Source: Saccostrea cucullata
Lineage: Eukaryota
Assembly (NCBI RefSeq): GCF_032062105.1
Contig: NW_026923709.1
Span: 124,001 to 188,000, forward strand
Reading direction: 5' to 3'
DNA: 64,000 nt
Below the pieces are notes generated by a model. The model had not been told where the DNA came from. It ran no database searches and worked only from the letters and a program-made list of their open reading frames with translations. Below are positions 15,425 through 64,000 of the stretch, in pieces. The position numbers were made by a program, and so were the translations under genes. Each line of letters starts with the position of its first letter. Positions within the stretch are counted from its first letter, which is position 1.

Positions 15425-15783
15425 GAGAGATATCTCTCTAGCATAGAGAGATATCTCTTTGGCTTATGGAGATATCTCTTAAGCTTATAGAGATATCTCT
15501 TTGACTAATAGAGATATCTTTAAAATTTAGAGAGATATCTCTTTCATTAAAAGAGATATCTCTTTAAACAAAAGAGATATCTCTTTTCGAAAGAGAGATA
15601 TCTTCATAAGCTAGAGAGATATCTCTTTAAGCGAGAGAGATATCTCTAAAAGTTAGAGAGATATCTCTTTTACAAGTTGAAAAGAGATATCTCTCTTAAT
15701 TAGAGAGATATCTCTTTAGATTTTCAAAAAGAGATATCTTTCTAAGCTAAAGACATATCTCTTTTAATGAAAGAGATATCTCT
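15425..15783. repeat. Left subterminal array: ~17 palindromic AGAGATATCTCT motifs at ~21-bp period
   Basis: Direct reading; 12-bp palindrome separated by variable ~9-bp spacers. Confidence 0.95.
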
Positions 15784-16334
15784 TTTCCAATCACCCTGAA
15801 AATAAAATAATTAATTCTCCCGTTAAAAACGAAAGCGAAACAGGAAGTAATGTCTGTTAAGTCGTTCGTTTTCTGATTATTAAAAAGAAGAGGATAAAGT
15901 TGACTGATTGATACAGGTAAACAACGTTAATTGCTTTTAATTATTGTTTTCAGCGGAAGTAATAGAATTTCAAACCAAAACGTTCCCCAAAGATTGGTAC
16001 CATATTATATTTATTTCATTTATTTAGCTCACAGGACAGCTGAGGTGGGGATATAGAATGCAAAGTCAATAACAACAAATCGGAAATACATGTACCCCAT
16101 ATTTCATCGATCACGGGAATACAGGGTTGATTACTACGTCGATTAAACATAATCCTGATAGAATTAATGTTCTTTTTTAATTAATTAATAATCCAAAAAT
16201 AAAAACGTCCAACATTACTTCTTTCATGTACACGGGGATGTATATATTCAATTTCAATATTAACTGTAGGACGTTAAACAACATACATGTACGATCAATA
16301 TACTAACTGTAAAGCCTTATGACCCCCTTCCCAA

Positions 16335-23660: not shown

Positions 23661-24240
23661 ACTCCAAAAAAAAATTACCCAAACAAAAGTGATGCAGCCA
23701 CAATATCATAAATATGAGGTTGGTACCCATCCACGACAAAACTCCTCTATAATCAGCTGATAATAACATCTCGGATTCAAGAGAAATCTGTTAAAAAAAA
23801 TAATGCAAAAGATAATTTCGAACTATTTCATTCGGTTAAGAATAAAACACTTCATTTTCTCTCAAAATAAACAAGAAACGGATGACAGTATTGACACTCT
23901 CTGATTTGTAAAGTTTACCTGTATTTCGAGCGAAATATTCCTGGTGGACGCTCGCACCCAATTTTTTATGACATGAAATTCATCCATCGTAAGTCGGAAA
24001 ACCCTTCGGCTTTGTAAAACTATTTAATTTCCCCCACAAGCTTTGTGTAAATCAGAAACATGCTGAACTCAATACACAACACCACCCGGAAGTGAAAGTT
24101 ATCGTAAAATCTCGCGAATCACGTGATGAGACTTACATCCTCTGGACCGAATTTTCTCAGCTTTTGAAATAATGAATAAAAAGATTACTTCCGGTAAAGG
24201 GAGAAGTCATTTCAAATGGAATTTAAATAAACATAATGAA

Positions 24241-24719
24241 GAGAGATATCTCTTTGCAATAAAGAGATATCTCTTTTTGCTTCAGAGATATCTCTTTTCG
24301 ACCCTTTTGAAAGATATCTCTTTCACTTTCAGAGATATCTTTTAAGATAAACTTAGAGAGATATCTCTTTTACTTTAAGAGATATCTCTTTAACTTGGAA
24401 AGATATCTCTCTAAGTGAAAGAGATATCTCTCTAGGTGAAAGAGATATCTCTCTAGTTGAAAGAGATATCTCTTTAACGATCAGAGATATCTCTTTAACG
24501 TTCAGAGATATCTCTTATCACGAAAGAGATATCTCTCAAGGGCAAAGAGATATCTCTCAAAGAAAAAGAGATATCTCTCTCAGTAAAAGAGATATCTCTC
24601 TAACTTTAAGAGATATCTCTTTCTTATAGAGATATCTCTTAAGAATAAGAGATATCTCTTAAATTTGAGAGATATCTCTATTTTTTAAGAGATATCTCTC
24701 TAAAATGAGAGATATCTCT
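24241..24719. repeat. Right subterminal array: ~23 palindromic AGAGATATCTCT motifs at ~21-bp period
   Basis: Direct reading; counterpart of the 15425-15783 array. Confidence 0.95.
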
Positions 24720-24815
24720 GTAATTTTAAAATAAAATTTATTTTCCGAATAAATAGTAAAAGGGCTTAATTGCCATATATATGTTAAGAGTAAAGACACA
24801 TTTCAACCTTTCAGG

Positions 24816-42936: not shown

Positions 42937-45900
42937 ATGGGTTCGAATAAAAAACAACTTAAAGAAGTTAATAAACAAAAGAAAGGAAAAGGAAAAAGAT
43001 GGAAGAAAGGCCAAAGCAGCAGTAGTAACCCCGAAACTAAAACATTTAGGGAGGCTGCCAAAAACAGATTTTTCCAAACATCGTCATCGAAAGGTTGTTA
43101 GCTCATACGTTTTTTTTTTGTTTTTTTTTGTTTTTTTTTTTACATTAATTTGATTCCTTTTTAGATTGCTTTTAATTTTTTTTCTTACCCGAGGAATAGA
43201 AAGCGTTATTTTCTGCCTCTCGGTCTGATCTTACATGTATTTATTAAAATTTATAAGTTTGCTACACAGGTACTTAGGTCTTCGTTAGTAAATACCTTAT
43301 TTGTTATGATTTGGTTAAGCTGATATTGTTATCCGGAATTATATAATCTTTTGTTGGTTCTGTGTTTTGTAATACTGTAACAGTTGCGTAATGATACAAT
43401 AAAATAGTTCCAAAATGGCATCCTTCTGTGGAGCACATGTGTTTTGACTGTGCACGAACCCATTGTCTAAAAAGACATAACATTGGCGACGAGGATCGTT
43501 CAGGATGGCAAAATTCGCAGCCATTGGTCGTATCGACATCTTCGACAACAATGTCGAAACCTGGAACTCGTACAGTGAGCGCCTTGACCAGTATTTTGTG
43601 TGCAATGACGTCAAGGAGGAAAAGAAAGTTCCCGCATTGCTAAGCCTCATAGGGGGTAAGACTTACCAGTTATTGAGAGGTTTGACAGCACCGACTAAAC
43701 CGGCAGACGTGGAATATGCCGCACTCGTGAAAATCCTTGGTGATCACTTGAACCCCCCTCCTGTAGTAATCTCCGAGAGATTTCGGTTTTACAAAAGGGA
43801 CCAGCGGGAAGGTGAGTCTATTAGAGACTATATAGCGGATCTTAGAAGATTGTCAGAACATTGTGCATTTAAAGACAGTCTGAACGAATCGCTGCGTGAC
43901 AGATTAGTTTGTGGCCTTCGGAGCGAGGCAATTCAGAATAAACTCTTAGCAGAAAAAGACTTGACATTAGAGAAGGCGACGCAGATAGCACAGGCTATGG
44001 AGACCGCATTCAAGGATGCAACCGAGCTGCAGTCCAAACACGTTGGAATGGTAAACAAGCTAGGGGTGAGACAGAAAAAGGGATATCACTCTGCTGGAAC
44101 TGGAGTAAGGTCGCCACAACCCAACATGCCTAAGGTGAAACGAGGTACGAATTCAAAGAAATGTTTCCGTTGTAACAGTACAGCTCATGATCAAAGTCAG
44201 TGTTATTACAAAGACAAACAGTGCTATAATTGTTCAAAAATTGGACATTGTAAAAAGGCATGTAGGAAAACAAAGGAGGTACACAATGTGGACTGGAGTG
44301 AGAATCTCATTGGATCATTAGATGTGAATTCAGTTGAAAAGACTCATTCTGGAGCAATCGTAGTCAACACAAACATTGACGGTGTAGATGTTGATATGGA
44401 ACTCGACACGGGCGCAGCAGTCTCCGTGATGTCAAAGAAAAAGTTCTGTGAGTATTTTCCAGGAAGGATTAAGAACTTACCTGAATCAAATATGTGTTTA
44501 AAGACATATACTGGTGAAATCTTGAAGCCTTGTGGAGTGGCACGTGTAAATGTGAGTCACAACAACCAGAAAAAGGATCTAGACTTGTACGTGATGCAGA
44601 AGGCAGGACCAACGCTCTTCGGAAGAGAGTGGCTTCAGCAGATTTCACTCGATTGGCCGTCCATCAAGTCCATGTCGTGTGTGACAGACAAGATTTCAGA
44701 CACTTGTTCTGATAATGTGAAAGCGGACTTAAAACACATGTTGGAAAAACATCGTTCAGTTTTCCAGAGTGACATAGGTACGGTTAAGGGTATTGAAGCT
44801 ACACTCAACTTAAAGCCGGACGCTAAACCAAAGTTCTGTAAAGCCCGCTCAGTACCGTATGCTCTCAAGCCTAAGGTCGAGGCTGAACTGGACAAACTAG
44901 TCAGAGATGGTATCATAACCAAGGTGGACTACAGCGAATGGGCAACGCCTATTGTCCCTGTCATCAAGTCTGATAAAAATGTGCGCATATGTGGTGATTT
45001 CAAGGTGACACTGAACCCTGTTCTTGAAATCGATCAGTATCCGCTGCCCCGCATTGAAGACATTTTTGCAGCACTCGCAGGTGGTAAGCGATTCACCAAG
45101 TTAGATTTACGACATGCATATCTACAAATGAGAGTAAATGAGGAGTCGCGCAACTTATTGACAATAAATACAGAGAAAGGACTCTACCGCTACAACCGTT
45201 TAGTTTATGGTGTGGCCTCAGCTCCTGCAATCTGGCAAAGGACCATCGACACAGTCTTACAGGGTCTCACAGGCGTCAAATGTATCATTGATGATATGAT
45301 AATAACGGGCTCATCTGAGGAAGAACACCTGAAGAATTTGGAAGCTGTATTAACGCGCCTGGATGAATACAACTTGCGTGTGAACTTGAATAAGTGTGAA
45401 TTCTTCAGAGAACGTGTTTCTTATTGTGGACATGAAATAGACTGTGAGGGTCTGCACAAAACGCAATCCAAGATTGAAGCAGTTGTCAGTGCGCCGAAGC
45501 CGAAGAATGTTTCAGAGTTGCGATCATTTCTGGGCATTGTTAACTATTATGCCAGATTTTTGCCTAACCTTTCAAGTCTTTTGTACCCGCTACACCAGTT
45601 ACTGTCAAAGAGCCGAAAGTGGTCCTGGTCTAGCGAATGTGACAAGGCATTTTCTGAAGTCAAACAGCTTATTACCTCTGATGAGATTTTGACTCATTAC
45701 GACCCACAGCGAGAGGTGCGATTAGCATGTGATGCTTCACCTTATGGTTTAGGGTGTGTATTATCCCATGTCATGGATGACGGATCAGAACGACCGATAG
45801 CATATGCATCTCGATCATTGTCGTCAGCAGAGCGGAACTATTCACAGATAGATCGTGAGGCTCTGGGGATAGTATGGGGTGTGAAACGTTTTCATACATA

Positions 45901-48900
45901 CCTCTATGGAAGACACTTCACTTTATTGACGGATCATCGCCCTCTTGTGTCCATCTTCAGCCCCAGCAAAGGTGTATCAGTCACCACAGCAGCACGCATG
46001 CAGAGATATGCTCTGTTTTTATCAGGGTATGATTATGACATTATGTACAAAAACACCAAAGCGCATGGAAATGCAGATAGCTTATCGAGGCTACCACTGT
46101 CTGACTGTGAATCTGATGATGATTATCAAGATATTGACTTGATGTACCTACCACAATTTGAAACATTACCAATCACCAGTGACCGTATTAGACAGGAAAC
46201 TGGACGTGATCCTGTCACTGTGAAGGTATATGGTTATACCATGAATGGATGGAGCTTTTCGGTCAAAGCAGATGATAAGGACTTGTATCCCTACTTTACG
46301 CGTAAGGACGAGTTAACAATTCACAATGGATGTTTGTTGTGGGGAATGAGAGTTGTTGTTCCAACAAAGCTTAGGGATCACATACTTAAGGAGCTTCATT
46401 TAGGTCACATTGGAGTAGTGAAGATGAAGGCATTAGCTCGAAGTGTGGTATGGTGGCCCGGGATCGATCTTGATATAGAGAGGATCACGAAAGCATGCTC
46501 AGGATGTCAGGAGTTCAAGCGTGCACCTCCAGCAGCCCCCATTCATCCGTGGGAGTGGCCCACTAAACCTTGGGAACGTATCCATATAGACTTCGCTGGG
46601 CCTTTTATGAACTGGATGTTCCTGGTAGCAGTAGATGCACATTCTAAATGGCCTGAGGTCATAATGATGCGCGAGACGACATCCCACAAGACTATTGAGG
46701 TCTTGAGAAGTATCTTTGCTAGAAATGGTGTTCCTACAGTGTTGGTCAGTGATAACGGACCTCAGTTTATGTCAGACGAGTTTGGAAACTTCATTCGTAC
46801 CAATGGAATAAAGCATGTGACTTCTGCTCCATATCATCCTAGCTCAAATGGATTAGCGGAACGTTTTGTACAATCATTCAAGTCCGCAATGAAGTCAAGC
46901 AAGAAAGATGGAGGTTCTGTGGAAACGAAGTTATCTAACTTTTTACTAGCCTATCGCAACGCAGCACATTCAACTACTGGAGAGTCACCCGCAAAGCTAT
47001 TCATTGGTCGTTCATTGCAGTCACGACTAGATTTGATAAAACCAGACATTGAACAAAATGTTAAAAACAAACAGTTTCACATCGCATCTAAGAGATCAAG
47101 TTCATTGCGTGTGTTTGAACCTGGGCACAGTATAATTGTTAGGGACTACCGTCACAGTTCAAAGTCGGACTGGGTACCAGGAACCGTTCAAGAGCAGACA
47201 GGACCTGTTTCTTACAGAGTGCAAGTTGGGGACAATACTTGGAGAAGACACGTAGATCAGATATATGATTCTTCACTAAAGAATCAGGGAGTTGTACCCA
47301 GTGATCTTGAGAAGTTTGTGCCACAGGTACATGTACCAACTCCTACAGTTAGTGCTAAGCAGTCTAGTCCAGAAGTCTTTCCGCAAGGTACGAAAGTCAG
47401 GCAGTCAACTCCAGAGGTCTTCAACAGGAAGAAAGCTAATAGTCCTATCCAGGAACAGAAATCTCAGCCAGAAGTTAGGACCGAGCCTACCATACTAGCC
47501 AGACAAAATCCAAGACGAAATGTTGGACCGCCCAAACGTTTCAGTGACTATGTTACTTTCAAATGAATTGTGCATTTTGTTTTGTGTATTATGGCACAGT
47601 ATTGGGGCACAATAATCCCCGTGCCTTTGTGTTGACCAAGAGGTCATTTTCACTTTGTATACTGTATTGTGTTGAATGTATTGGCCTGGTAAAACATGTC
47701 TGTGAAGTTTAATATTTGAAATGTGTATATTGCCCAAAATTTCATTCAATTTAAGTTCTGATTTTAATTCTTGTGGAAGTCAAAATTTAGTGGGGAGGAA
47801 TGTTATGATTTGGTTAAGCTGATATTGTTATCCGGAATTATATAATCTTTTGTTGGTTCTGTGTTTTGTAATACTGTAACAGTTGCGTAATGATACAATA
47901 AAATAGTTCCAAAATGGCATCCTTCTGTGGAGCACATGTGTTTTGACTGTGCACGAACCCATTGTCTAAAAAGACATAACATTATTGATCAATGTTCACT
48001 TTTACCTTTTTTTATCATATCAATAAGGTACATAAATATTTATAAACCAAGACTCATGTGCATGTGGGTTGCCCCTGCCCGATTAAAACATTTTATTGGC
48101 AGTACAATAGTTGGGGCGAGCACAGTTTTGTATAATAGAATTACTGTAAACCAACTTTTATTCGTGTGTGAGAAATTTTCACGAGGTTCGCGAGAGCCTT
48201 GTCATGGAGAATATTTCTCACCGCGAACCGGTCCTTAAATTCCCTGTTGCTATGAACAACAACCTCAAAAAAGGCTTGATCGCGAAAATTTATCGTCGCA
48301 AACTACTTTTTAAGGAGTAAATCGCGAAATAAAGTTGTCACGAATAAAAGTTGGTTTACCGTATTCTACGTTATTTGTAAGGTTACGGATGGGTTCGCTC
48401 TGATAAGGTGTTCATGCTGAGTTGTATCTCGCTGAGTGGTTTCGCCCCATTTAACTACAGGGTATACAATGTCATGTAAATGTTCTTCTATTAAGTGATA
48501 ATTTATATTACACACATGATGTATGCAACAGTAATTAGATAATTGAATAACATTTTATATCTGATATAGAGTGAGTTTTTTTTATAAATTGAAAAGACAT
48601 GTGAAAGGTCTAGACTGTGATGGTGTTTTAGTTCCATAATTCAGTTTGAAATGTGCCATTTTTACACTAATTTTCTACATGGGACATACCGTATAATGGG
48701 TATTTTTTACGTGCTGCTAATTTTTACAAGTTTTATAAATCCGTAAAATTTAAACGTGTAAAATTTCACATGATTTATAAAACGACTCGTGTAAAATTTC
48801 AACATCATTTGTGTAAAAATAATGCTAATTACCATTAAGCTCACTCCCTGGAGGCTAAATGATTAGTGTAGTGTTGATATTTTGAGCACTTTTAAGTCAA

Positions 48901-51900
48901 TCATCAATTGGGATCATATAGGTAAATCTCAATTAACTTGTATGAATTATACAAACATCGTATATTAATTAATCAATTAAACCCACCTGGTCACTTTTTT
49001 TTTAGTATTTTTACGAGAAACTAACTTCCGACAATGCCTTTATGATTACAGGTCTTCCAATTATACCCGTGTTTTCAATCTTTGACCCTTTCTTCTGTTT
49101 CATGTTCTTTGAATAAAACTTTGACTTCCTAATAGACTGTCATACTTGTACTTCAATTATGATAGTTTGAGTTGTCTCTCTTTGTATTCGGTAAAAATGG
49201 TGTGCCTAGCTTTGTGTTTTATAGAATTTGAATTTATAAATGAAGGGCACCTTGTTCGTGTACATAAAGGTAAATGATAAAAACATTATACAATGTGTAA
49301 TTTGTTGCATTGTTTATATTGTTAAAATTTAATAAATCTCTCTCTCTTGCCTCTCTCTCTTGCATCGGACACATTATATTTACTGTCAGAAACGCATTCA
49401 AAGTGCTGACAATCACTGATCTGGAATTTTACATCTGATGATTTTAATTTTTAAGGACATGAAAATGATGTTCAATTTGTAAAATATTAACGCGTAAAAA
49501 TTTAAATCACCCTCTTTTGACCAAAATTCGTAAAAATTTACAGCAGTAAAAATAACCCGTTATACGGTATACACAGTATTACACTGTATGTTCTAAAAAC
49601 CTGATATACTGTAGATCTAGCCATGACCTGATGAAAAAATGTCCTTTAAAATTAATTTATCTCCATGTATCTGCACAATCCTTTATCTGACATTTTTATT
49701 TCAAAGTTTTTCATTTGTAAACTTTGGTTCATTGACATATCATGCATTATATGTATGTTGTTTATGGAGGAATATCAATGACTATTGGTAATGAGTTTAC
49801 TACATTTTGCATGCCAATCAAATTTTTATTTAAGCTGATTATTATAATAGTCTGATAGTAATTATGCACATCTAAATGCAGGCTTATGTTTTACACAAAG
49901 ACAATTTTGTCTATTTTTTTTAAATTCTTTTGAAACAGGAGAAAGTAGTCTTACTGTTGATGCTTTGGCTAAACATAATGAAGAACAGTTAGATAAAGAT
50001 GGTGATGTTAGTCTACGAGCGGAGTCAGATGTTGTCAGCGCTGCCGGAAAGACGTTTAATACCTGGGCGACAAACTGGACAGAGTGTACCAACACAACAT
50101 TTAGTCGAGTACATAGGTACTGGGCATCAAATTCGGCTTTTCATAAAGAGGTAAGTGAAATTATTTTAGAGGATGTTTTCATCATTTGTTTAAGTAAGCA
50201 ACACAAGTGTTCACAAATTTTGGAGGGGAAAATCTTTTTATTTCGAAATCTGAGTGTGGTTTACAATTACATGTAGCTGGTAATTGTGCAGTTGAGGATT
50301 CTGATTCAAATACTGGAGATTCCTTATTTTTTGAGAGCTTAAATTTTCATGAAATGTCTCTTTCACATTTAGTGGGGGTACAATAATTAATAATGATAGT
50401 AGACAGTTTATCGCGAGATTTTACTTTGATTTCAGCACCGAGAAAATAAAAGCGAGTAATTTTATTTTGCGAGAGGTGCTTGTCACTCATGATCATAAGG
50501 CATTCTTTTTGTAGGTGTTAGCTGTGTTAGCGGCAGTTACAGAGGTGATAAAAACCCAGGGAGGCTCTGAATCAGAAACAGAATACTTCGCTGCTTTGGT
50601 GGGTGTTTTACTTCAGCTTTCTGATTCATGATTATCATGTATAAAGTACATTTATCTTAAATTGTTAAAAAAAGACCCAGAAAATGATGTATAATGATTA
50701 ATGAAATATCTCTTTAGAAGACTTTGTCTGTTTTTTTTTTGTCATACTAAACAAGTTTTACATGTACTTTATAATGTAAGAACAGTATCAGATAATTATT
50801 TGAACAGATGACAGCACTGGAGACAACAGAGGGAGAAGACTCTGTATCAGCCGTGGCCTACCTCCTCAGCTTAGTCATGAAGAGGTCAGTCACCTTGTAC
50901 ACATATATAACTGTATAATTAGTAATTTTAGTGAGATGCAAATTTGATTGTTTTATGGAAATACTTCTAGAATCAATGATGTAAATGCTGTGAAAATTAT
51001 CCACATTGCTAAACCTGTAACATGATATTAAGTCTCCTCCAAAGAGAAAATTTGTTTGGAGCATATGTCCTAAAATGTTAATAGATATTTTTTGCATGAG
51101 AACTGTTTCTTATTATTTACAGAGTTCCTGCCCCAGTCCTAAAGAGAAGGTTTTCAGAAATTTCCAAAGAATTTCTGGATGTCCTTGTGAAGTACAGCGA
51201 GGGGCATTCTCCTGCTCTCCTCAAGTCTGTAAGTACTTAGATTTCCATCAGTGTTACACCGTACGCTCTACAGAAAACCAGTCTCTTAAATGCTTTGTTA
51301 CTGCCGCAGCTATTATTTGCAAATAAGTCTGACACTTTGAAATCCATCCAAGTCTTGACATTTTTCAGACTGATGCACAATTTTTAATAAAAAATTTTGA
51401 CCAGAAATATGTTTAAAAAGAGAAGGTCACAAAACCTGTGGATTTTTCATTGAGTTAATATTTGATTTGCAGGTGCTTGATATTGTTCGTAAATTTTTAA
51501 CTACTGTTAATTTCTTTTAAAATTTTTAATTTGTAGTTGTTGCTGTGTCTGGCGTTGCTGCTTAGAGTTCAGGACCAGGCTACTTGGAGTAACTCCTCCA
51601 CACAGCGAGTGTATCAAAGTATGCTGGCCTTCACAGTCAACAAAAAGCCTAAGGTATCATCTGTATCATATTACTGACAACAAAAAACCCAATGTATAAT
51701 CATAGACAACAAAAAAACCCAAGGTATAATCATAGACAACAAAAAACCAAAATTAGATATTATCACTGACAACAAAAAAAAAAAAAAACAAAGGTATTTT
51801 TACTGACAACAAAAACCCAAGGTATCACTGACAGCAAAAAAAAAAAACCAAGGCACTATTACAATGAACAAAAAACCCAAGGTATTATCACTGACAACAA

Positions 51901-54900
51901 AAACCCACAACTTTATCACCGACAACAAAAAAAACCCCCAAGATTTTATCACTGACAGCAAAAAAAAACCCAAAGGTATTTTCACAATCAACCAAACACG
52001 TAAGGTTTTATCACTCACAACAAAAAAAAAAATTAAGGTAGTACTATCATAGTCAACAAAAAACCAGGGATATATCGTATCACTTACAGAATATTAAATT
52101 TATATGTGTATACACATGTATATATATTCATTGTTTTGAAAGTTCAGAATGCAGAATCATGTATCTGACAGTCATCATTCTGATAATAATCTGTTTGGTA
52201 TTTCTTTTGGCAGGTGAGAAAGGCAGCACAACAAGGGGTGAATATTGTCCTGAGGGGTAGTGTCTTTATGAACCCACCAGAGACGGCCCCTCCCCACCAC
52301 CCCGCCAGCTCCCTGACCGCCAAGTTCTGTATCCAGGTCATCGAGCAAAGCGGAGGTTAGAGCTACTGTGAACTCAGTTATTTTCGTGGGGGTTTCATTT
52401 TTGTGGTTTTTTAAGGTATGAAGGGACCCAAGAATTCATGTCCACCATGAAATGTACTTTTTTTTAAGATATCATTCCTCAACAATTCTTCATCCTCGAA
52501 ATTAAATCCCCATGAACCCACATTTCTTCCTCAAACCGCGAAAATTTGATCCCACGAAAATATGCGATTTTACAGTAAACACTGAGTGCAAAATTCATTC
52601 TTGATTAATTTTTCTTAACATATTTAAAAAGGACTATTCTTTTACCTTTTGTTTGAATGTGTAAAATTCTTGTTTAATTGTAAATGACAAGTATTTTTAT
52701 ACACATTTGGTGGGAAAAAAATCCAGAAAAAATAACATCTGTAAATTGATAGTATTAAGATCTACAAAAAACAAAGGAAAGCTTGTGACCAACTCCTTGA
52801 GGTTAAAATTGTGAAAGATTCTCACATGTGGATACTAAAAGGTATTCAATAGGGTCTGTAACTAAGGTATATTTCAGTATTAAGATCTATTTAAAAAAAA
52901 AAAACAATGCATCAAAGTTTTTTTCTTTTTTCTACAGGTTCTACAGAGTCTTCAGACACACTATACATTCTAACCTTATTGAAGGACATCATGTGTACAT
53001 TCTCTCAGAGTAGTCTGAAATCAGTGTGTGAGACCATACTGAGAGTGATGACACTAAGTAATGTGGTGAGTATACTGATAGAAATCAGTGTGTGAGACCG
53101 TACTGAGAGTGATGACACTGAGTAATGTGGTGAGTACTGATAGAAATCAGTGTGTGAGACTATACTGAGAGTGATGACAGTAATGTGGTGAGTACTGATA
53201 GAAATCAGTGTGTGAGACCATACTGAGAGTGATGACACTTAGTAATGTGGTGAGTACTGATAGAAATCAGTGTGTGAGACTATACTGAGAGTGATGACAC
53301 TTAGTAATGTGGTGAGTACTGATAGAAGTCAGTGTGTGAGACCATACTGAGAGTGATGACACTTAGTAATGTGGTGAGTACTGATAGAAATCAGTGTGTG
53401 AGACCATACTGAGAGTGATGACACTTAGTAATGTGGTGAGTACTGATAGAAATCAGTGTGTGAGACCATACTGAGAGTGATGACACTTAGTAATGTGGTG
53501 AGTATACTGATAGAAATCAGTGTGTGAGACCATACTGAGAGTGATGACACTTAGTAATGTGGTGAGTACTGATAGAAATCAGTGTGTGAGACCATACTGA
53601 GAGTGATGACACTTAGTAATGTGGTGAGTACTGATAGAAATCAGTGTGTGAGACCATACTGAGAGTGATGACACTGAGTAATGTGGTGAGTATACTGATA
53701 GAAATCAGTGTGTGAGACTATACTGAGAGTGATGACAGTAATGTGGTGAGTACTGATAGAAATCAGTGTGTGAGACCGTACTGAGAGTGATGACACTAAG
53801 TAATGTGGTAAGTATACTGATAGAAATCAGTGTGTGAGACCATGAGACCGTACTGAGAGTGATGACACTTAGTAATGTGGTGAGTACTGATAGAAGTCAG
53901 TGTGTGAGACCATACTGAGAGTGATGACACTTAGTAATGTGGTGAGTACTGATAGAAATCAGTGTGTGAGACCATACTGAGAGTGATGACACTTAGTAAT
54001 GTGGTGAGTACTGATAGAAATCAGTGTGTGAGACCATACTGAGAGTGATGACACTTAGTAATGTGGTGAGTATACTGATAGAAATCAGTGTGTGAGACCA
54101 TACTGAGAGTGATGACACTTAGTAATGTGGTGAGTACTGATAGAAATCAGTGTGTGAGACCATACTGAGAGTGATGACACTTAGTAATGTGGTGAGTACT
54201 GATAGAAATCAGTGTGTGAGACCATACTGAGAGTGATGACACTTAGTAATGTGGTGAGTATACTGATAGAAATCAGTGTGTGAGACCATACTGAGAGTGA
54301 TGACACTTAGTAATGTGGTGAGTATACTGATAGAAATCAGTGTGTGAGACCATACTGAGAGTGATGACACTTAGTAATGTGGTGAGTACTGATAGAAATC
54401 AGTGTGTGAGACCATACTGAGAGTGATGACACTTAGTAATGTGGTGAGTACTGATAGAAATCAGTGTGTGAGACCATACTGAGAGTGATGACACTTAGTA
54501 ATGTGGTGAGTATACTGATAGAAATCAGTGTGTGAGACCGTACTGAGAGTGATGACACTTAGTAATGTGGTGAGTACTGATAGAAATCAGTGTGTGAGAC
54601 CATACTGAGAGTGATGACACTTAGTAATGTGGTGAGTACTGATAGAAATCAGTGTGTGAGACCATACTGAGAGTGATGACACTGAGTAATGTGGTGAGTA
54701 TACTGATAGAAATCAGTGTGTGAGACCGTACTGAGAGTGATGACACTGTAGTAAGTGTGGTGAGAGTGATACAGTGTGTGAGAGTAATGACACTTAGTAA
54801 TGTGGTGATACTGATAGAAATCAGTGTGTGAGACCATACTGAGAGTGATGACACTTAGTAATGTGGTGAGTACTGATAGAAATCAGTGTGTGAGACCATA

Positions 54901-57900
54901 CTGAGAGTGATGACACTTAGTAATGTGGTGAGTACTGATAGAAATCAGTGTGTGAGACCATACTGAGAGTGATGACACTTAGTAATGTGGTGAGTATACT
55001 GATAGAAATCAGTGTGTGAGACCGTACTGAGAGTGATGACACTTAGTAATGTGGTGAGTACTGATAGAAATCAGTGTGTGAGACCGTACTGAGAGTGATG
55101 ACACTTAGTAATGTGGTGAGTACTGATAGAAATCAGTGTGTGAGACCATACTGAGAGTGATGACACTTAGTAATGTGGTGAGTACTGATAGAAATCAGTG
55201 TGTGAGACCATACTGAGAGTGATGACACTTAGTACTGTGGTGAGTACTGATAGAAGTCAGTGTGTGTGTCTACTGATAGAAGTCAGTGTGTGAGACCGTA
55301 CTGAGAGTGATGACACTTAGTAATGTGGTGAGTACTGATAGAAATCAGTGTGTGAGACCATACTGAGAGTGATGACACTTAGTAATGTGGTGAGTACTGA
55401 TAGAAGTCAGTGTGTGAGACCGTACTGAGAGTGATGACACTTAGTAATGTGGTGAGTATACTGATAGAAATCAGTGTGTGAGACCATACTGAGAGTGATG
55501 ACACTTAGTAATGTGGTGAGTACTGATAGAAATCAGTGTGTGAGACCGTACTGAGAGTGATGACACTTAGTAATGTGGTGAGTACTGATAGAAATCAGTG
55601 TGTGAGACCGTACTGAGAGTGATGACACTTAGTAATGTGGTGAGTACTGATAGAAATCAGTGTGTGAGACCATACTGAGAGTGATGACACTTAGTAATGT
55701 GGTGAGTACTGATAGAAATCAGTGTGTGAGACCATACTGAGAGTGATGACACTTAGTAATGTGGTGAGTACTGATAGAAATCAGTGTGTGAGACCGTACT
55801 GAGAGTGATGACACTTAGTAATGTGGTGAGTACTGATAGAAATCAGTGTGTGAGACCGTACTGAGAGTGATGACACTTAGTAATGTGGTGAGTACTGATA
55901 GAAATCAGTGTGTGTGTGAGTACTGATAGAAATCAGTGTGTACTGAGAGTGATGACACTTAGTAATGTGGTGAGTACTGATAGAAATCAGTGTGTGAGAC
56001 CATACTGAGAGTGATGACACTTAGTAATGTGGTGAGTACTGATAGAAATCAGTGTGTGAGACCATACTGAGAGTGATGACACTTAGTAATGTGGTGAGTA
56101 CTGATAGAAATCAGTGTGTGAGACCATACTGAGAGTGATGACACTTAGTAATGTGGTGAGTACTGATAGAAATCAGTGTGTACTGAGAGTGATGACACTT
56201 AGTAATGTGTTGTGTACTGATAGTACTGAGTGTGAGAGACCATACTGAGAGTGATGACACTTAGTAATGTGGTGAGTACTGATAGAAATCAGTGTGTGAG
56301 ACCGTACTGAGAGTGATGACACTTAGTAATGTGGTGAGTACTGATAGAAATCTGTGTGTGAGACCGTACTGAGAGTGATGACACTTAGTAATGTGGTGAG
56401 TATACTGATAGAAATCAGTGTGTGAGACCATACTGAGAGTGATGACACTTAGTAATGTGGTGAGTATACTGATAGAAATCAGTGTGTGAGACCATACTGA
56501 GAGTGATGACACTTAGTAATGTGGTGAGTAGTGATAGAAATCAGTGTGTGAGACCATACTGAGAGTGATGACACTCAGTAATGTGGTGAGTACTGATAGA
56601 AATCAGTGTGTGTGAGAGTGATGACACTTAGTAATGTGGTGAGTACTGATAGAAGTCAGTGTGTGAGACCATACTGAGAGTGATGACACTTAGTAATGTG
56701 GTGGGTACTGATAGAAATCAGTGTGTGAGACCGTACTGAGAGTGATGACACTCAGTAATGTGGTGAGTACTGATAGAAATCAGTGTGTGAGACCATACTG
56801 AGAGTGATGACACTTAGTAATGTGGTGAGTACTGATAGAAATCAGTGTGTGAGACCATACTGAGAGTGATGACACTTAGTAATGTGGTGAGTACTGATAG
56901 AAATCAGTGTGTGAGACCATACTGAGAGTGATGACACTTAGTAATGTGGTGAGTATACTGATAGAAATCAGTGTGTGAGACGGTACTGAGAGTGATGACA
57001 CTTAGTAATGTGGTGAGTACTGATAGAAATCAGTGTGTGAGACCATACTGAGAGTGATGACACTTAGTAATGTGGTGAGTATACTGATAGAAATCAGTGT
57101 GTGAGACCGTACTGAGAGTGATGACACTTAGTAATGTGGTGAGTACTGATAGAAATCAGTGTGTGAGTGTGTAATCAGTGTGTGAGAGTGATGTAGTAAT
57201 GTGGTGAGTACTGATAGAAATCAGTGTGTGAGACCGTACTGAGAGTGATGACACTTAGTAATGTGGTGAGTACTGATAGAAATCAGTGTGTGAGACCATA
57301 CTGAGAGTGATGACACTTAGTAATGTGGTGAGTATACTGATAGAAATCAGTGTGTGAGACCATACTGAGAGTGATGACACTTAGTAATGTGGTGAGTACT
57401 GATAGAAATCAGTGTGTGAGACCATACTGAGAGTGATGACACTTAGTAATGTGGTGAGTATACTGATAGAAATCAGTGTGTGAGACCATACTGAGAGTGA
57501 TGACACTGAGTAATGTGGTGAGTATACTGATAGAAATCAGTGTGTGACCATACTGAGAGTGATGACACTTAGTAATGTGGTGAGTACTGATAGAAATCAG
57601 TGTGTGAGACCATACTGAGAGTGATGACACTTAGTAATGTGGTGAGTACTGATAGAAATCAGTGTGTGAGACCATACTGAGAGTGATGACACTTAGTAAT
57701 GTGGTGAGTACTGATAGAAATCAGTGTGTGAGACCATACTGAGAGTGATGACACTTAGTAATGTGGTGAGTATACTGATAGAAATCAGTGTGTGAGACCA
57801 TACTGAGAGTGATGACACTTAGTAATGTGGTGAGTACTGATAGAAATCAGTGTGTGAGACCATACTGAGAGTGATGACACTTAGTAATGTGGTGAGTACT

Positions 57901-60900
57901 GATAGAAATCAGTGTGTGAGACCATACTGAGAGTGATGACACTTAGTAATGTGGTGAGTACTGATAGAAATCAGTGTGTGAGACCATACTGAGAGTGATG
58001 ACACTTAGTAATGTGGTGAGTACTGATAGAAATCAGTGTGTGAGACCATACTGAGAGTGATGACACTTAGTAATGTGGTGAGTACTGATAGAAATCAGTG
58101 TGTGAGACCATACTGAGAGTGAGTGTGTGACACTTAGTAATGTGGTGAGTATACTGATAGAAATCAGTGTGTGAGACCGTACTGAGAGTGATGACACTTA
58201 GTAATGTGGTGAGTACTGATAGAAATCAGTGTGTGAGACCATACTGAGAGTGATGACACTTAGTAATGTGGTGAATGATGAAATCACTGAGAGTGATGTG
58301 ATGTGGTGAGTATACTGAGAGTGATGACACTTGATAAATCAGTGTGTGAGACCATACTGAGAGTGATGACACTTAGTAATGTGGTGAGTAAACTGATAGA
58401 AATCAGTGTGTGAGACAGTAGTGAGAGATATGACACTTAGTAATGTGGTGAGTGTACTGATAGAAATCAGTGTGTGAGACCATACTGAGAGTGATGACAC
58501 TTAGTAATGTGGTGATAGAAGAAATCAGTGTGTGAGACCGTACTGAGAGTGATGACACTTAGTAATGTGGTGAGTACTGATAGAAATCAGTGTGTGAGAC
58601 CGTACTGAGAGTGATGACACTTAGTAATGTGGTGAGTACTGATAGAAATCAGTGTGTGTGTGATGACACTTAGTAATGTGGTGAGTACTGATAGAAATCA
58701 GTGTGTGAGACCGTACTGAGAGTGATGACACTTAGTAATGTGGTGAGTACTGATAGAAATCAGTGTGTGAGACCGTACTGAGAGTGATGACACTTAGTAA
58801 TGTGGTGAGTACTGATAGAAATCAGTGTGTGAGACCATACTGAGAGTGATGACACTTAGTAATGTGGTGAGTATACTGATAGAAATCGTACTGAGAGTGT
58901 GTGTGAGTACTGATAGAAATCAGTGTGTGAGACCATACTGAGAGTGATGACACTAGTAATGTGGTAGTACTGATAGAAATCAGTGTGTGAGACCATACTG
59001 AGAGTGATGACACTTAGTAATGTGGTAAGTACTGATAGAAATCAGTGTGTGAGACCATACTGAGAGTGATGACACTTAGTAATGTGGTGAGTACTGATAG
59101 AAATCAGTGTGTGAGACCGTACTGAGAGTGATGACACTTAGTAATGTGGTGAGTACTGATAGAAATCAGTGTGTGAGACCATACTGAGAGTGATGACACT
59201 TAGTAATGTGGTGAGTACTGATAGAAATCAGTGTGTGAGACCATACTGAGAGTGATGACACTTAGTAATGTGGTGAGTATACTGATAGAAATCAGTGTGT
59301 GAGACCATACTGAGAGTGATGACACTTAGTAATGTGGTGAGTACTGATAGAAATCAGTGTGTGAGACCATACTGAGAGTGATGACACTTAGTAATGTGGT
59401 GAGACCATACTACTGATAGAAATCAGTGTGTGAGACCATACTGAGAGTGATGACACTTAGTAATGTGGTGAGTACTGATAGAAATCAGTGTGTGAGACCA
59501 TACTGAGAGTGATGACACTGAGTAATGTGGTGAGTACTGATAGAAATCAGTGTGTGAGACCGTACTGAGAGTGATGACACTTAGTAATGTGGTGAGTACT
59601 GATAGAAATCAGTGTGTGATACCATACTGAGAGTGATGACACTTAGTAATGTGGTGAGTACTGATAGAAATCAGTGTGTGAGACCGTACTGAGAGTGATG
59701 ACACTTAGTAATGTGGTGAGTACTGATAGAAATCAGTGTGTGAGACCGTACTGAGAGTGATGACAGTAATGTGGTGAGTACTGATAGAAATCAGTGTGTG
59801 AGACCATACTGAGAGTGATGACACTTAGTAATGTGGTGAGTAGTGATAGAAATCAGTGTGTGAGACCGTACTGAGAGTGATGACACTTAGTAATGTGGTG
59901 AGTACTGATAGAAATCAGTGTGTGAGACCGTACTGAGAGTGATGACACTTAGTAATGTGGTGAGTACTGATAGAAATCAGTGTGTGAGACCATACTGAGA
60001 GTGATGACACTTAGTAATGTGGTGAGTACTGAGAGAAATCAGTGTGTGAGACCATACTGAGAGTGATGACACTTAGTAATGTGGTGAGTACTGATAGAAA
60101 TCAGTGTGTGAGACCATACTGAGAGTGATGACACTTAGTAATGTGGTGAGTACTGATAGAAATCAGTGTGTGAGACCATACTGAGAGTGATGACACTTAG
60201 TATTGTGGTGAGTACTGATTGAAATCAGTGTGTGAGACCATACTGAGAGTGATGACACTTAGTAATGTGGTGAGTATACTGATAGAAATCAGTGTGTGAG
60301 ACCATACTGAGAGTGATGACACTTAGTAATGTGGTGAGTACTGATAGAAATCAGTGTGTGAGACCATACTGAGAGTGATGACACTTAGTAATGTGGTGAG
60401 TACTGATAGAAATCAGTGTGTGAGACCGTACTGAGAGTGATGACACTTAGTAATGTGGTGAGTATACTGATAGAAATCAGTGTGTGAGACCATACTGAGA
60501 GTGATGACACTTAGTAATGTGGTGAGTACTGATAGAAATCAGTGTGTGAGACCATACTGAGAGTGATGACACTTAGTAATGTGGTGAGTACTGATAGAAA
60601 TCAGTGTGTGAGACCATACTGAGAGTGATGACACTTAGTAATGTGGTGAGTACTGATAGAAATCAGTGTGTGAGACCATACTGAGAGTGATGACACTTAG
60701 TAATGTGGTGAGTACTGATAGAAATCAGTGTGTGAGACCATACTGAGAGTGATGACACTTAGTAATGTGGTGAGTACTGATAGAAATCAGTGTGTGAGAC
60801 CATACTGAGAGTGATGACACTTAGTAATGTGGTGAGTACTGATAGAAATCAGTGTGTGAGACCGTACTGAGAGTGATGACACTTAGTATGTGGTGAGTAC

Positions 60901-63900
60901 TGATAGAAATCAGTGTGTGAGACCGTACTGAGAGTGATGACACTTAGTAATGTGGTGAGTACTGATAGAAATCAGTGTGTGAGACCATACTGAGAGTGAT
61001 GACACTTAGTAATGTGGTGAGTATACTGATAGAAATCAGTGTGTGAGACCGTACTGAGAGTGATGACACTTAGTAATGTGGTGAGTACTGATAGAAATCA
61101 GTGTGTGAGACCATACTGAGAGTGATGACACTTAGTAATGTGGTGAGTACTGATAGAAGTCAGTGTGTGAGACCGTACTGAGAGTGATGACACTTAGTAA
61201 TGTGGTGAGTACTGATAGAAATCAGTGTGTGAGACCATACTGAGAGTGATGACACTTAGTAATGTGGTGAGTACTGATAGAAATCAGTGTGTGAGACCAT
61301 ACTGAGAGTGATGACACTTAGTAATGTGGTGAGTACTGATAGAAGTCAGTGTGTGAGACCGTACTGAGAGTGATGTACTGAGAGTGATGAACTTAGTAAT
61401 GTGGTGAGTACTGATAGAAATCAGTGTGTGAGACCGTACTGAGAGTGATGACACTTAGTAATGTGGTGAGTACTGATAGAAATCAGTGTGTGAGACCATA
61501 CTGAGAGTGATGACACTTAGTAATGTGGTGAGTACTGATAGAAATCAGTGTGTGAGACCGTACTGAGAGTGATGACACTTAGTAATGTGGTGAGTACTGA
61601 TAGAAATCAGTGTGTGAGACCATACTGAGAGTGATGACACTTAGTAATGTGGTGAGTACTGATAGAAATCAGTGTGTGAGACCATACTGAGAGTGATGAC
61701 ACTTAGTAATGTGGTGAGTACTGATAGAAATCAGTGTGTGAGACCATACTGAGAGTGATGACACTTAGTAATGTGGTGAGTACTGATAGAAATCAGTGTG
61801 TGAGACCATACTGAGAGTGATGACACTTAGTAATGTGGTGAGTACTGATAGAAATCAGTGTGTGAGACCATACTGAGAGTGATGACACTTAGTAATGTGG
61901 TGAGTATACTGATATAAATCAGTGTGTGAGACCGTACTGAGAGTGATGACACTTAGTAATGTGGTGAGTACTGATAGAAATCAGTGTGTGAGACCGTACT
62001 GAGAGTGATGACACTTAGTAATGTGGTAAGTACTGATAGAAATCAGTGTGTGAGACCATACTGAGAGTGATGACACTTAGTAATGTGGTGAGTACTGATA
62101 GAAATCAGTGTGTGAGACCATACTGAGAGTGATGACACTTAGTAATGTGGTGAGTACTGATAGAAATCAGTGTGTGAGACCGTACTGAGAGTGATGACAC
62201 TTAGTAATGTGGTGAGTACTGATAGAAATCAGTGTGTGAGACCGTACTGAGAGTGATGACACTTAGTAATGTGGTGAGTACTGATAGAAATCAGTGTGTG
62301 AGACCGTACTGAGAGTGATGACACTTAGTAATGTGGTGAGTACTGATAGAAATCAGTGTGTGAGACCATACTGAGAGTGATGACTTAGTAATGTGGAAGT
62401 ATCAGTGTGTGAGACCATACTGAGAGTGATGACACTTAGTAATGTGGTGAGTATACTGATAGAAATCAGTGTGTGAGACCGTACTGAGAGTGATGACACT
62501 TAGTAATGTGGTGAGTATACTGATAGAAATCAGTGTGTGAGACCGTACTGAGAGTGATGACACTGAGTAACGTGGTGAGTACTGATAGAAATCAGTGTGT
62601 GAGACCGTACTGAGAGTGATGACACTTAGTAATGTGGTGAGTATACTGATAGAAATCAGTGTGTGAGACCGTACTGAGAGTGATGACACTTAGTAATGTG
62701 GTGAGTACTGATAGAAATCATAGAAATCAGTGTGTGAGACCGTACTGAGAGTGATGACACTTAGTAATGTGGTGAGTACCAATAAAACACAGAGTTTGAT
62801 AATATAATTGGTAATGTGGTTAATACCAATACAAATACAGAGTTTGAGACTATCCTTAGTAATATGGTGAATGCCAATACCAATGTAAAATATTTGTGTA
62901 TTGACAATTATTTTTTTTTGCAGATGGTGACATCTTGTGGAATGAAGGCTTTATATAGCCTCTTTAATGGAAATCCCAGGGTTACTACTCTGAATGCAGA
63001 ACTGAATGCACAAATGATCAAAGTAGGTTTAGAAACCCATGTACATGTTTTATAACCACGCAATACATTGATGTACGGTCCATAAGGCCGTCAATCAGCT
63101 GTCAATTATGTCTGTATTTGTATTTTGTAGGCTTTGTATGAATACCAACCTTCAAATAATGATGTACAACCAATGAAGGCGTGGCTAGCAGTAATGGAGG
63201 CAGCACATAAAAATCTGACAAGGTAAACAGTCATTAGTGTTCCCATGAGACAAATCAGGTTTAAGGCCTAAAGAAAATAAATAACTTGATTCTCAGGCCA
63301 GTTTTGTCACGAACAAATAGGGGAAGCAGGTTTTTTTCTTTATACTTCATAAACACAGGCACCAGCTTTTAGATTTTTTTTATAATTTCAAAAATTATAA
63401 ATTTTTGTAAATGCTTCAATATTGAGTGTAGAAATGGGAATAAAAAGGTATTTACAGTATTACAGAAAAAAAAAATTCTTTTTGGTCGCTGATTATTTTG
63501 TGGTGAATTTCAGACTGGATGAGAAGCTCTGTCTTGGACACCTCCCCCGTTTCTTCTCGGTGTGTATGATGTGTCTTCTGTCTGAGAAAGCCGAGGTCAA
63601 CTCTAGTGCCGCAAAAACCATGAAGGTCTGTATATCTGATCTGTCTATTGTAGTACTCTATACAGGGTTATTCTTGCCCCCATGTTATTTTCGCCCTTTC
63701 ACACTTGTAAACAAATTTGCCCCATTTTGAATTTGTTTTAGAATTATAATACTGTATTCTTTGAATTCGTCCTGTTTTTAATTCCCCCAAATAAGGGTTG
63801 GGAGGAGAAGGGGCAAAATAAAATGGAGGTGAAAATTGGATAGTTTGCATCCCGGGAAGAATGATCAAGAAATCAAATAAACTAATTTTCAGAGTTGTCG

Positions 63901-64000
63901 CAGAGAAATGAAATGAAAATGAAAAATAAAACATTATTAATCAATGTTACAGGAGCTGCTGAGGGCCTGTCTGGCCTCTGCTGTAGAGGGCGCTAAACAA
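42937..64000 (+). CDS. RRP12: RRP12-like ribosomal RNA processing protein (5' part; continues beyond window)
   Basis: Coding exons 42937-43093, 49939-50150, 50515-50598, 50808-50884, 51123-51228, 51537-51653, 52214-52355, 52938-53065, 62924-63022, 63131-63222, 63514-63625 and 63953-edge; all GT-AG and in phase. Recognisable RRP12 segments: [112 protein letters not shown]. Confidence 0.95.
43302..47981 (+). mobile_element. Full-length Ty3/Gypsy (Mag-like) LTR retrotransposon in RRP12 coding intron 1
   Basis: Identical 181-bp LTRs 43302-43482 and 47801-47981 (TGTTATG...CATAACA); TSD TTATT at 43297-43301 and 47982-47986; PBS TGGCGACGAGGAT (43484-43496, complementary to tRNA-Ser(GCU) 3' end); PPT AGTGGGGAGGAA 47789-47800. 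Confidence 0.98.
43505..47566 (+). CDS. Gag-Pol polyprotein, single ORF, 1353 aa
   Basis: Two CCHC knuckles ([28 protein letters not shown]), protease LDTGA, RT ([16 protein letters not shown]), RNase H (DAS, DH, NADSLSR), integrase HHCC plus DDE (HIDFAGP, SDNG, ER); PR-RT-RH-IN order. Confidence 0.97.
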   Translation: MAKFAAIGRIDIFDNNVETWNSYSERLDQYFVCNDVKEEKKVPALLSLIGGKTYQLLRGLTAPTKPADVEYAALVKILGDHLNPPPVVISERFRFYKRDQREGESIRDYIADLRRLSEHCAFKDSLNESLRDRLVCGLRSEAIQNKLLAEKDLTLEKATQIAQAMETAFKDATELQSKHVGMVNKLGVRQKKGYHSAGTGVRSPQPNMPKVKRGTNSKKCFRCNSTAHDQSQCYYKDKQCYNCSKIGHCKKACRKTKEVHNVDWSENLIGSLDVNSVEKTHSGAIVVNTNIDGVDVDMELDTGAAVSVMSKKKFCEYFPGRIKNLPESNMCLKTYTGEILKPCGVARVNVSHNNQKKDLDLYVMQKAGPTLFGREWLQQISLDWPSIKSMSCVTDKISDTCSDNVKADLKHMLEKHRSVFQSDIGTVKGIEATLNLKPDAKPKFCKARSVPYALKPKVEAELDKLVRDGIITKVDYSEWATPIVPVIKSDKNVRICGDFKVTLNPVLEIDQYPLPRIEDIFAALAGGKRFTKLDLRHAYLQMRVNEESRNLLTINTEKGLYRYNRLVYGVASAPAIWQRTIDTVLQGLTGVKCIIDDMIITGSSEEEHLKNLEAVLTRLDEYNLRVNLNKCEFFRERVSYCGHEIDCEGLHKTQSKIEAVVSAPKPKNVSELRSFLGIVNYYARFLPNLSSLLYPLHQLLSKSRKWSWSSECDKAFSEVKQLITSDEILTHYDPQREVRLACDASPYGLGCVLSHVMDDGSERPIAYASRSLSSAERNYSQIDREALGIVWGVKRFHTYLYGRHFTLLTDHRPLVSIFSPSKGVSVTTAARMQRYALFLSGYDYDIMYKNTKAHGNADSLSRLPLSDCESDDDYQDIDLMYLPQFETLPITSDRIRQETGRDPVTVKVYGYTMNGWSFSVKADDKDLYPYFTRKDELTIHNGCLLWGMRVVVPTKLRDHILKELHLGHIGVVKMKALARSVVWWPGIDLDIERITKACSGCQEFKRAPPAAPIHPWEWPTKPWERIHIDFAGPFMNWMFLVAVDAHSKWPEVIMMRETTSHKTIEVLRSIFARNGVPTVLVSDNGPQFMSDEFGNFIRTNGIKHVTSAPYHPSSNGLAERFVQSFKSAMKSSKKDGGSVETKLSNFLLAYRNAAHSTTGESPAKLFIGRSLQSRLDLIKPDIEQNVKNKQFHIASKRSSSLRVFEPGHSIIVRDYRHSSKSDWVPGTVQEQTGPVSYRVQVGDNTWRRHVDQIYDSSLKNQGVVPSDLEKFVPQVHVPTPTVSAKQSSPEVFPQGTKVRQSTPEVFNRKKANSPIQEQKSQPEVRTEPTILARQNPRRNVGPPKRFSDYVTFK
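48144..48361. mobile_element. TA-flanked MITE (Tc1/mariner-pogo type)
   Basis: TA|CTGTAAACCAACTTTTATTCGTG ... CACGAATAAAAGTTGGTTTACCG|TA. Confidence 0.8.
48689..49567. mobile_element. TA-flanked pogo/Tigger-type non-autonomous element
   Basis: TA|CCGTATAATGGGTATTTTTTAC ... GTAAAAATAACCCGTTATACGG|TA. Confidence 0.75.
51631..52075 (+). repeat. Degenerate ~30-bp tandem array derived from the RRP12 exon 6 end plus donor site (~13 copies)
   Basis: Seed TCACAGTCAACAAAAAGCCTAAG|GTATCA; consensus of copies TCACTGACAACAAAAAACCCAAGGTATTA. Confidence 0.85.
52367..52575. mobile_element. TA-flanked MITE in RRP12 intron 7
   Basis: TACTGTGAACTCAGTTATTTTCGTGGG ... CCCACGAAAATATGCGATTTTACAGTA imperfect TIRs. 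Confidence 0.6.
53017..62779 (+). repeat. ~9.8-kb minisatellite, ~155 copies of a 62/64-bp unit = RRP12 exon 8 3' end plus 5' splice site
   Basis: Unit GAAATCAGTGTGTGAGACCATACTGAGAGTGATGACACTTAGTAATGTG|GTGAGT(AT)ACTGATA; the first copy is the coding exon end (53017-53065). Copy number is array length divided by unit length. Confidence 0.98.

What the first reader, a model, noticed from the sequence alone, without database searches (positions are those of the whole stretch)
53081..62779. Intronic array variants look like coding-sequence evolution: mostly synonymous and donor-preserving
Seen, reading units in the RRP12 frame. Synonymous variants: AAA>AAG (e.g. ~53327, 53895, 55405, 61159), TCA>TCT (~56353), ACC>ACT (~53161, 53281, 53719), ACC>ACG (~56982), CTT>CTG/CTA/CTC (~53120, 53798, 56576, 56753), AAT>AAC (~62571). 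The commonest variant is conservative, ATA>GTA (I>V). In clean units I found few other replacements (GAG>GAT ~59620, AAT>ATT ~60203, AAT>ACT ~55235), each a singleton. Donor variants GTAAGT (~53808, 59025, 62026) and GTGGGT (56701) remain valid donors. Only about a quarter of random substitutions are expected to be silent. Inference: units exchange sequence with the functional exon by conversion or unequal crossover, so the array either archives historical exon alleles or is selected because any unit can become the exon end. Caveat: counts are by eye, the sample is small, and frameshifting indels and scrambled units also occur.
Basis: partly seen in the sequence, partly recalled or inferred. 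Interest (0 to 1): 0.8.

Follow-up and report, generated by a model that had tools for sequence, protein, structure and literature searches.

The report
Exon-tethered splice-donor minisatellite in RRP12
An oyster gene carries about 158 tandem copies of one exon's end and splice donor in its intron; new changes in the copies are unselected, but the copies have stayed matched to the working exon across two species, most likely because they keep swapping sequence with it.

Summary
All listed variants are real. The array is a known kind (a donor-junction minisatellite or "mirage") in intron 8 of Saccostrea cucullata RRP12, and the scan has noted such arrays on other DNA. "Mostly synonymous" holds only by type and only in this allele (8/12, P 0.001-0.008). 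By copy it is 31%. A second allele adds five new types, all replacements (pooled 8/17, P 0.02-0.09). "Donor-preserving" is uninformative. In 14 other donor arrays, variants private to the units look neutral (29/88 synonymous, 25 expected), so selection on units is not supported. Exchange with the exon is supported by other evidence. S. echinata has the same array with the same boundaries. Each species' array follows its own exon at a diagnostic site. The two array consensuses differ by two synonymous changes and no replacement, where 4-14 replacements are expected without exchange. In the 14 arrays, exon-linked differences are 73% synonymous (P about 1e-5). Best reading: a neutral, fast-turnover array that exchanges with a selected exon, which acts as a one-way filter. 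CTC units look like a relic of the ancestral exon. No reads or population alleles were available.

The parts
52938..53065 (+). RRP12 exon 8 (128 nt; ends in phase 0). Its last 48 nt (53018-53065, 16 codons) are unit 0 of the array
   Evidence: frame, AG/GT; human RRP12, 7wts_K 299-339, E 5.6e-7; RefSeq model XP_062602976.1 joins it to exon 9
53066..53081 (+). authentic splice donor and intron head (16-nt form) of unit 0
   Evidence: reading on to the next donor meets TGA after 9 codons
53082..62779 (+). 157 intronic units of 62/64 bp: 48-nt exon-tail copy + 14/16-nt donor and intron head; 23 units scrambled or with other indels
53798..53798 (+). unit 12 carries the exon's own allele CTA at unit position 39 (the only intronic unit that does)
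56576..56753 (+). units 57 and 60 carry CTC at position 39, the exon state in S. echinata and the other oysters; also in 2 units of the second allele
62780..62884 (+). two older, degenerate 48-bp copies of the same donor junction 3' of the array
62924..63022 (+). RRP12 exon 9
51631..52075 (+). older degenerate donor-junction array on exon 6 (about 28-33 bp units), also in the second allele and in S. echinata; its units keep codon states that the S. cucullata exon has lost

Best explanation
The array is a splice-donor-junction minisatellite that arose once, before S. cucullata and S. echinata split, by tandem duplication of the last 48 nt of exon 8 plus 14-16 nt of intron (shown: same boundaries in both species). 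It is non-coding and turns over quickly by unequal exchange or conversion (inferred from interspersed variants and higher-order patterns). New mutations in the units are not selected (shown for private variants). The exon is unit 0 of the same homogenising pool and the only copy under purifying selection. It can pass its sequence into the array, while replacements that reach it are removed with the chromosome (inferred). This one-way filter keeps the array consensus protein-compatible over long times and loads older, exon-derived variation with synonymous states, helped by very divergent exon alleles in this species (inferred). The 8/12 in this one allele is that older component plus small-sample luck.
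For: S. echinata has the orthologous array. Exon and units both read CTC at position 24 there, while exon and units both read CTG in S. cucullata; the outgroups read CTC. Array consensuses differ by 2 synonymous substitutions and 0 replacements, whereas exons differ at 39% of synonymous sites and introns at about 27%. Expected replacements without exchange: 10-14 (P<=1e-5), or 3.7 (P 0.02) if only the local rate is used. Simulation: P(no amino-acid difference) <=0.01 per species if the array is isolated from the exon, 0.3-0.6 with exchange. Fourteen other arrays: private types 29/88 synonymous (25.4 expected, P 0.21); types shared with the exon 11/15 (P 2e-5); exon vs consensus 19/26 (P about 1e-5); the signal vanishes in the two wrong frames and survives removal of CpG sites. 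In RRP12 the 4 types shared by both alleles are all exon-compatible (P about 0.02); allele-private types are 4/12 synonymous. Allelic synonymous divergence in this gene is about 0.1-0.2 (my estimate from the codon counts).
Against: The species comparison rests on one clean diagnostic site, one partial one and an absence. The repeat region is also slow at neutral sites (2 changes, about 6-7 expected), which introgression could explain. The simple exchange model predicts only 39-49% synonymous exon-vs-consensus differences against 73% observed (P 0.0004-0.011), so something more is needed: allele swapping, weak load or assembly mosaics. There is no gradient towards the exon. The commonest variant (I>V, about a third of units) is a replacement absent from both Saccostrea exons seen. 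CTG and T35 could be templated by the unit's internal 15-nt-offset repeat. The two allele contigs look mosaic.
Confidence: 0.62

Rival explanations
1. Units are themselves under purifying selection, because any unit can become the exon end by crossover or can be spliced in.
For: 8/12 synonymous types in this allele; no replacement in either species' consensus; exon-vs-consensus differences are more synonymous than the simple exchange model predicts. A 48-nt unit would be in frame if included.
Against: Private variants are neutral in 14 arrays. The second allele has recurrent C>S, V>M, T>I and N>D at residues that are near-invariant in 48 homologues. 17 units are frameshifted and the 4-nt deletion recurs in both alleles. 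All S. echinata units carry a 1-nt insertion. Use of a later donor meets a stop codon, and the units have no pyrimidine tract.
Confidence: 0.1
2. There is no lasting exchange. The arrays are young copies of the exon (independent duplications at the same breakpoints, or a recently introgressed patch), and the synonymous excess in this allele is chance plus local mutation bias.
For: The excess did not replicate in the second allele. A P of 0.003 is likely somewhere among 100-300 arrays (26-59%). Three types sit at one site. The internal repeat can template CTG. A more distant oyster has an independent 28-bp array on the same donor. The repeat region is slow at neutral sites too.
Against: Both unit boundaries and the intron head are shared between species whose introns differ by about 27%. 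The 5' part of exon 8 is normally diverged. Exon alleles sit deep in other arrays, linked to non-exon variants and to higher-order duplications. The 14-array signal is out of sample.
Confidence: 0.2
3. Assembly artefact: haplotype mixing or polishing put alleles of the other exon copy into exons and units.
For: Downstream of the array the two contigs differ in exons but hardly in four introns (4/980). 23 units look scrambled. Both second-allele contigs break at arrays. No reads could be checked.
Against: Shared variants occur in both contigs in repeated patterns. The species comparison uses two separate assemblies. Exon alleles in units travel with non-exon changes, which polishing would not produce. 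It could still inflate the exon-vs-consensus count and explain the singletons.
Confidence: 0.08

Closest known systems
Amphioxus 'mirage' minisatellites (globin BflGb6/BflGb9, Adh3; PMC3087553, PMC3902484)
   Same: Tandem duplication of an exon-intron boundary, splice signals in most units, concerted evolution among units, copy number that differs between lineages.
   Different: Far longer here (158 units against 3-6 in BflGb6). Shared by two species. The passages read describe homogenisation among units and exclusion of boundary units, not a tether to the coding exon or a synonymous signature.
Human donor-spanning VNTRs: F7 intron 7, CBS intron 13, 6-16 intron 2, LMNB2, PDGF (PMC1557585)
   Same: The first unit spans the exon-intron boundary and repeats the donor; only the first or the nearest donors are used.
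   Different: F7 copies just 4 exon bases, so there is no codon signal to read. Here 16 codons are copied. Donor choice was not measured here.
Concerted evolution of duplicates by gene conversion, including gene-pseudogene pairs (Fawcett and Innan, PMC3924837)
   Same: Copies older than a species split stay alike within each species; a non-functional copy exchanges with a functional one.
   Different: The partners are a 48-nt exon tail and its own intronic tandem copies, one selected copy against many neutral ones, not whole genes.
Coding minisatellites under selection (e.g. the Prdm9 zinc-finger array; PMC3890296, title and abstract only)
   Same: Tandem units that can be read as codons and turn over by unequal exchange.
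   Different: These units are not translated (62/64 nt, early stop), and their private variation is neutral.

Membership tests
Donor-junction minisatellite ('mirage', F7 type) | First unit spans a true exon-intron boundary | tested here: met
   Unit 0 = last 48 nt of RRP12 exon 8 + donor
Donor-junction minisatellite ('mirage', F7 type) | Head-to-tail units that repeat the donor in the intron | tested here: met
   157 further units; all but 3 keep the GT
Donor-junction minisatellite ('mirage', F7 type) | Copy number and unit order vary between alleles or lineages | tested here: met
   Unit order and variant content differ between alleles; about 13 full and partial units in S. echinata against 158. 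The second allele's length is unknown (contig break).
Donor-junction minisatellite ('mirage', F7 type) | Normal splicing at the first donor | not testable with these tools
   No RNA run was listed. The RefSeq model uses the first donor, which is annotation, not a test.
Donor-junction minisatellite ('mirage', F7 type) | Somatic length instability (Adh3 mirages) | not tested
   Needs reads
Concerted evolution by gene conversion or unequal exchange | The duplication is older than the species split | tested here: met
   Same 5' and 3' unit boundaries and intron head in S. echinata; independent origin or introgression not fully excluded
Concerted evolution by gene conversion or unequal exchange | Copies within a species share species-specific states | tested here: met
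   Position 24: G in exon and units of S. cucullata, C in exon and units of S. echinata; one clean site
Concerted evolution by gene conversion or unequal exchange | Exchange events or tracts observed directly | not testable with these tools
   Needs pedigree, sperm or population long reads
Coding minisatellite under purifying selection | Units translated in frame | tested here: not met
   62/64-nt period; stop after 9 intron codons; 17 frameshifted units
Coding minisatellite under purifying selection | Replacements depleted among new unit variants | tested here: not met
   RRP12 allele-private types 4/12 synonymous; 14 other arrays 29/88 against 25.4 expected

The most novel reading that the evidence does not exclude
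Oyster donor-junction arrays form a genome-wide class in which an exon tail and its intronic copies exchange sequence in both directions over millions of years. The arrays store past and divergent exon alleles, act as targets for recombination between deep haplotypes, and impose a measurable conversion load on conserved genes. Exchange rates and their direction could then be measured at very many loci.
Probability: 0.3. Interest if true: 0.65.

Novelty: new variant of a known kind. Interest (0 to 1): 0.45.

Why it matters
Donor-spanning repeats are known as curiosities of splice-site choice. Here the copied part holds 16 codons, so the codon pattern reports where a variant has been: changes that passed through the exon are synonymous, and changes born in the intron are not. 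That gives a natural read-out of exchange between one selected and many neutral copies, repeated at many loci in one genome. It also warns that such arrays break assemblies (both second-allele contigs end in one) and mislead annotation (one RefSeq model starts at the last unit).

Tried and rejected
RNA and DNA reads: the one run search listed none, so read laying was not used and no population exon alleles were seen. The second allele's exons 7-8 are not in the assembly. Word searches with exon-sized queries reached only other oyster genera, and their third positions are too diverged to test allele sharing. I therefore used the large protein search once to get a full-length query, which led to S. 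echinata. The Ostrea edulis gene was not on record. The Adh3 mirage paper is not held. Rejected: donor preservation as evidence (two types only); a gradient towards the exon; CpG decay as the cause of the synonymous signal; in-frame use of later donors. Left out of the panel: L036, L050 and L055 (same repeat family as L039), L040 (almost no exon in the unit), L045 and L047 (no clear exon). Reading frames were confirmed by homology for 5 of the 14 arrays. The rest rest on the open frame back to an acceptor. L041 is ambiguous; with its other frame the private class becomes 33/88, P 0.044.

Full report
What is there. The window lies on a 220,430-bp contig of a 1.17-Gb assembly. Exon 8 (52938-53065) matches human RRP12 residues 299-339. 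Its last 48 nt and the first 14 or 16 nt of the intron are repeated 158 times, the exon itself being unit 0. The period is not a multiple of three, and reading on to the second donor meets a stop after nine codons, so the intronic units are not coding.

The observation. Among clean units there are 12 coding substitution types, 8 synonymous, against a neutral share of 24-29% (P 0.002-0.008; 0.0007 conditional on base change; 1/12 and 0/12 in the other frames). The excess depends on how one counts: 5/8 by site (P 0.02-0.05), 21/67 by copy, 12/37 with scrambled units. Donor preservation rests on two types, three units have lost the GT, and 17 units are frameshifted in the exon part. There is no gradient of similarity to the exon (rho 0.11, P 0.21).

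First out-of-sample test: the second allele. Contig C3286 begins with the last 60 units of the other allele, followed by exons 9 onward. It shares the consensus, AAG, GTA, CTG, CTC, the TA insertion and the 4-nt deletion, so these are real. Its five new coding types are all replacements, four of them recurrent. They hit Cys, Thr, Asn and Val positions; among 48 homologues these changes are absent or rare, except I>L, which is common. Pooled, 8/17 types are synonymous (P 0.02-0.09). Types private to one allele, leaving out the exon's own CTA, are 4/12 synonymous, as neutral (P 0.3-0.5). The four shared types are three synonymous changes and I>V, a residue seen in 4 of 48 homologues (P about 0.02 for all four being exon-compatible). 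Young variation is therefore neutral; only the older part leans synonymous.

Second test: other arrays. Donor-junction arrays are common here: 598 pattern matches against 41 for the reversed control, with several matches per array. I analysed 14 with an identifiable exon, choosing the frame from the open frame back to an acceptor before looking at variants; five frames were confirmed by homology. Variant types private to the units are 29/88 synonymous, with 25.4 expected (P 0.21). Types that a minority of units share with the real exon are 11/15 synonymous (P 2e-5). Differences between exon and array consensus are 19/26 synonymous (P about 1e-5). The last two results hold without CpG sites and without ambiguous loci, and vanish in the wrong frames. 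In several arrays the exon's allele travels with non-exon changes or sits in duplicated blocks of units, so it is not a polishing slip.

Third test: a sister species. The S. echinata gene (L060) has an array on the same donor with the same unit start and the same intron head. Across exons 2-11 the species differ at 39% of synonymous sites (corrected 0.55) and at about 27% of alignable intron sites. Yet the two array consensuses differ by only two substitutions in the 48 nt, both synonymous, plus small insertions at the unit edge in S. echinata. At position 24 exon and array both read C in S. echinata, as do the outgroups, and both read G in S. cucullata. At position 39 S. echinata has CTC throughout, and S. 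cucullata keeps CTC in two units of each allele. A neutral array cut off from its exon should show 10-14 replacements (P<=1e-5), or about 4 if only the locally slower rate is allowed (P 0.02). In a simple simulation an isolated array keeps the exon's peptide in at most 1% of runs; an array that exchanges with a selected exon does so in 30-57%, with neutral private variants.

Mechanism. Shown: common boundaries in two species, a shared species-specific change in exon and array, a protein-compatible consensus, and neutral private variation. Inferred: unequal exchange or conversion with the exon as unit 0, and purifying selection on that unit alone, which filters flow in one direction. The simple model gives 39-49% synonymous exon-vs-consensus differences, below the 73% seen (P 0.0004-0.011). 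The likeliest addition is recombination between very divergent alleles: the two alleles of exons 2-6 differ at 31 synonymous and 4 replacement codons in 596 nt. Weak selection on common variants, or haplotype mosaics in the assembly, could also contribute. Local mutation may explain single variants: positions 19-27 and 34-42 of the unit resemble each other, and copying between them would give CTG and T35; I>V lies at a CpG.

Comparison with what is known. The structure is that of amphioxus mirages (PMC3087553, PMC3902484) and of the human F7, CBS and 6-16 repeats, where only the first or nearest donors are used (PMC1557585). The dynamics are those of concerted evolution between functional and non-functional duplicates (PMC3924837). 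In seven searches of the held library I found no paper that describes an exon tail and its intronic copies co-evolving, or that reads the codon pattern in such arrays; the library is incomplete. Earlier notes of this scan gave the mirage lead and reported such arrays at other genes; I checked the papers and the abundance myself.

Limits. No sequencing run was listed, so splicing, population alleles and singleton variants are unchecked. The second allele's exon 8 is missing from the assembly. The species test rests on one clean site and on an absence. The panel is 14 arrays chosen by a donor pattern. The spliced model was searched exon by exon and never joined, and the N stretch was left as it is.

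Verdict. The underlying idea of exchange with the functional exon, with some old exon states kept in the array, is supported by independent evidence. This is a new variant of a known kind; interest 0.45.

Noticed in passing
window 43302-47981: Full-length Ty3/Gypsy-type LTR retrotransposon in RRP12 intron 1: identical 181-bp LTRs (TG...CA), 5-bp target duplication, one 1353-codon gag-pol frame; a very recent insertion. The S. echinata intron 1 is only about 1.4 kb and cannot hold it.
   Followed up: partly
window 51631-52075; L023; L060 6104-6469 and 7125-7487: The exon-6 donor array exists in both alleles and in S. echinata. S. cucullata units keep ACT and CCC, the S. echinata exon states, while the S. 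cucullata exon has ACA and CCT: an older array that has stopped following its exon.
   Followed up: partly
L026 1421-1521: A more distant oyster has an independent 28-bp x 3.6 array on the same exon-8 donor; Crassostrea-like contigs have none.
   Followed up: partly
L060 48255-48988; C5846 downstream of the window (L013): A third donor array in S. echinata RRP12 (52 bp x 14) has only one or two degenerate copies in S. cucullata; S. echinata also has a 36-bp x 6 array just before the exon-5 acceptor.
   Followed up: no
window 62924-64000 and beyond vs L011 3741-5667: The two allele contigs differ in exons 9-14 (17 synonymous, 5 replacement codons in 653 nt) but hardly in four introns (4/980), while intron 12 differs at 17/155: a haplotype mosaic, from assembly or from exon-restricted conversion.
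   Followed up: partly
L011 units 47, 56, 58 and 48, 54, 55, 57; L060 8767-8894: The replacements T>I (linked to CTC) and V>M occur both in the second allele and in the S. echinata array: relics or recurrent C>T changes.
   Followed up: no
L023 (G000:C23479): The allele of exons 2-6 is very deep: about half the synonymous distance to S. echinata and 10-14% in introns, which hints at a hybrid or cryptic-lineage animal.
   Followed up: partly
P0097 (XP_062597874.1): The RefSeq model on the second-allele contig starts at the Met in the last array unit, because exons 1-8 are missing there: an annotation artefact of the array.
   Followed up: yes
window 15425-15786 and 24235-24744: Two arrays of 21-bp units built on a palindromic core, about 9 kb apart; already noted by the scan as the ends of a large element.
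   Followed up: no
window 52359-52580: A 215-bp dispersed repeat with thousands of candidate copies sits in intron 7 right after the donor.
   Followed up: no
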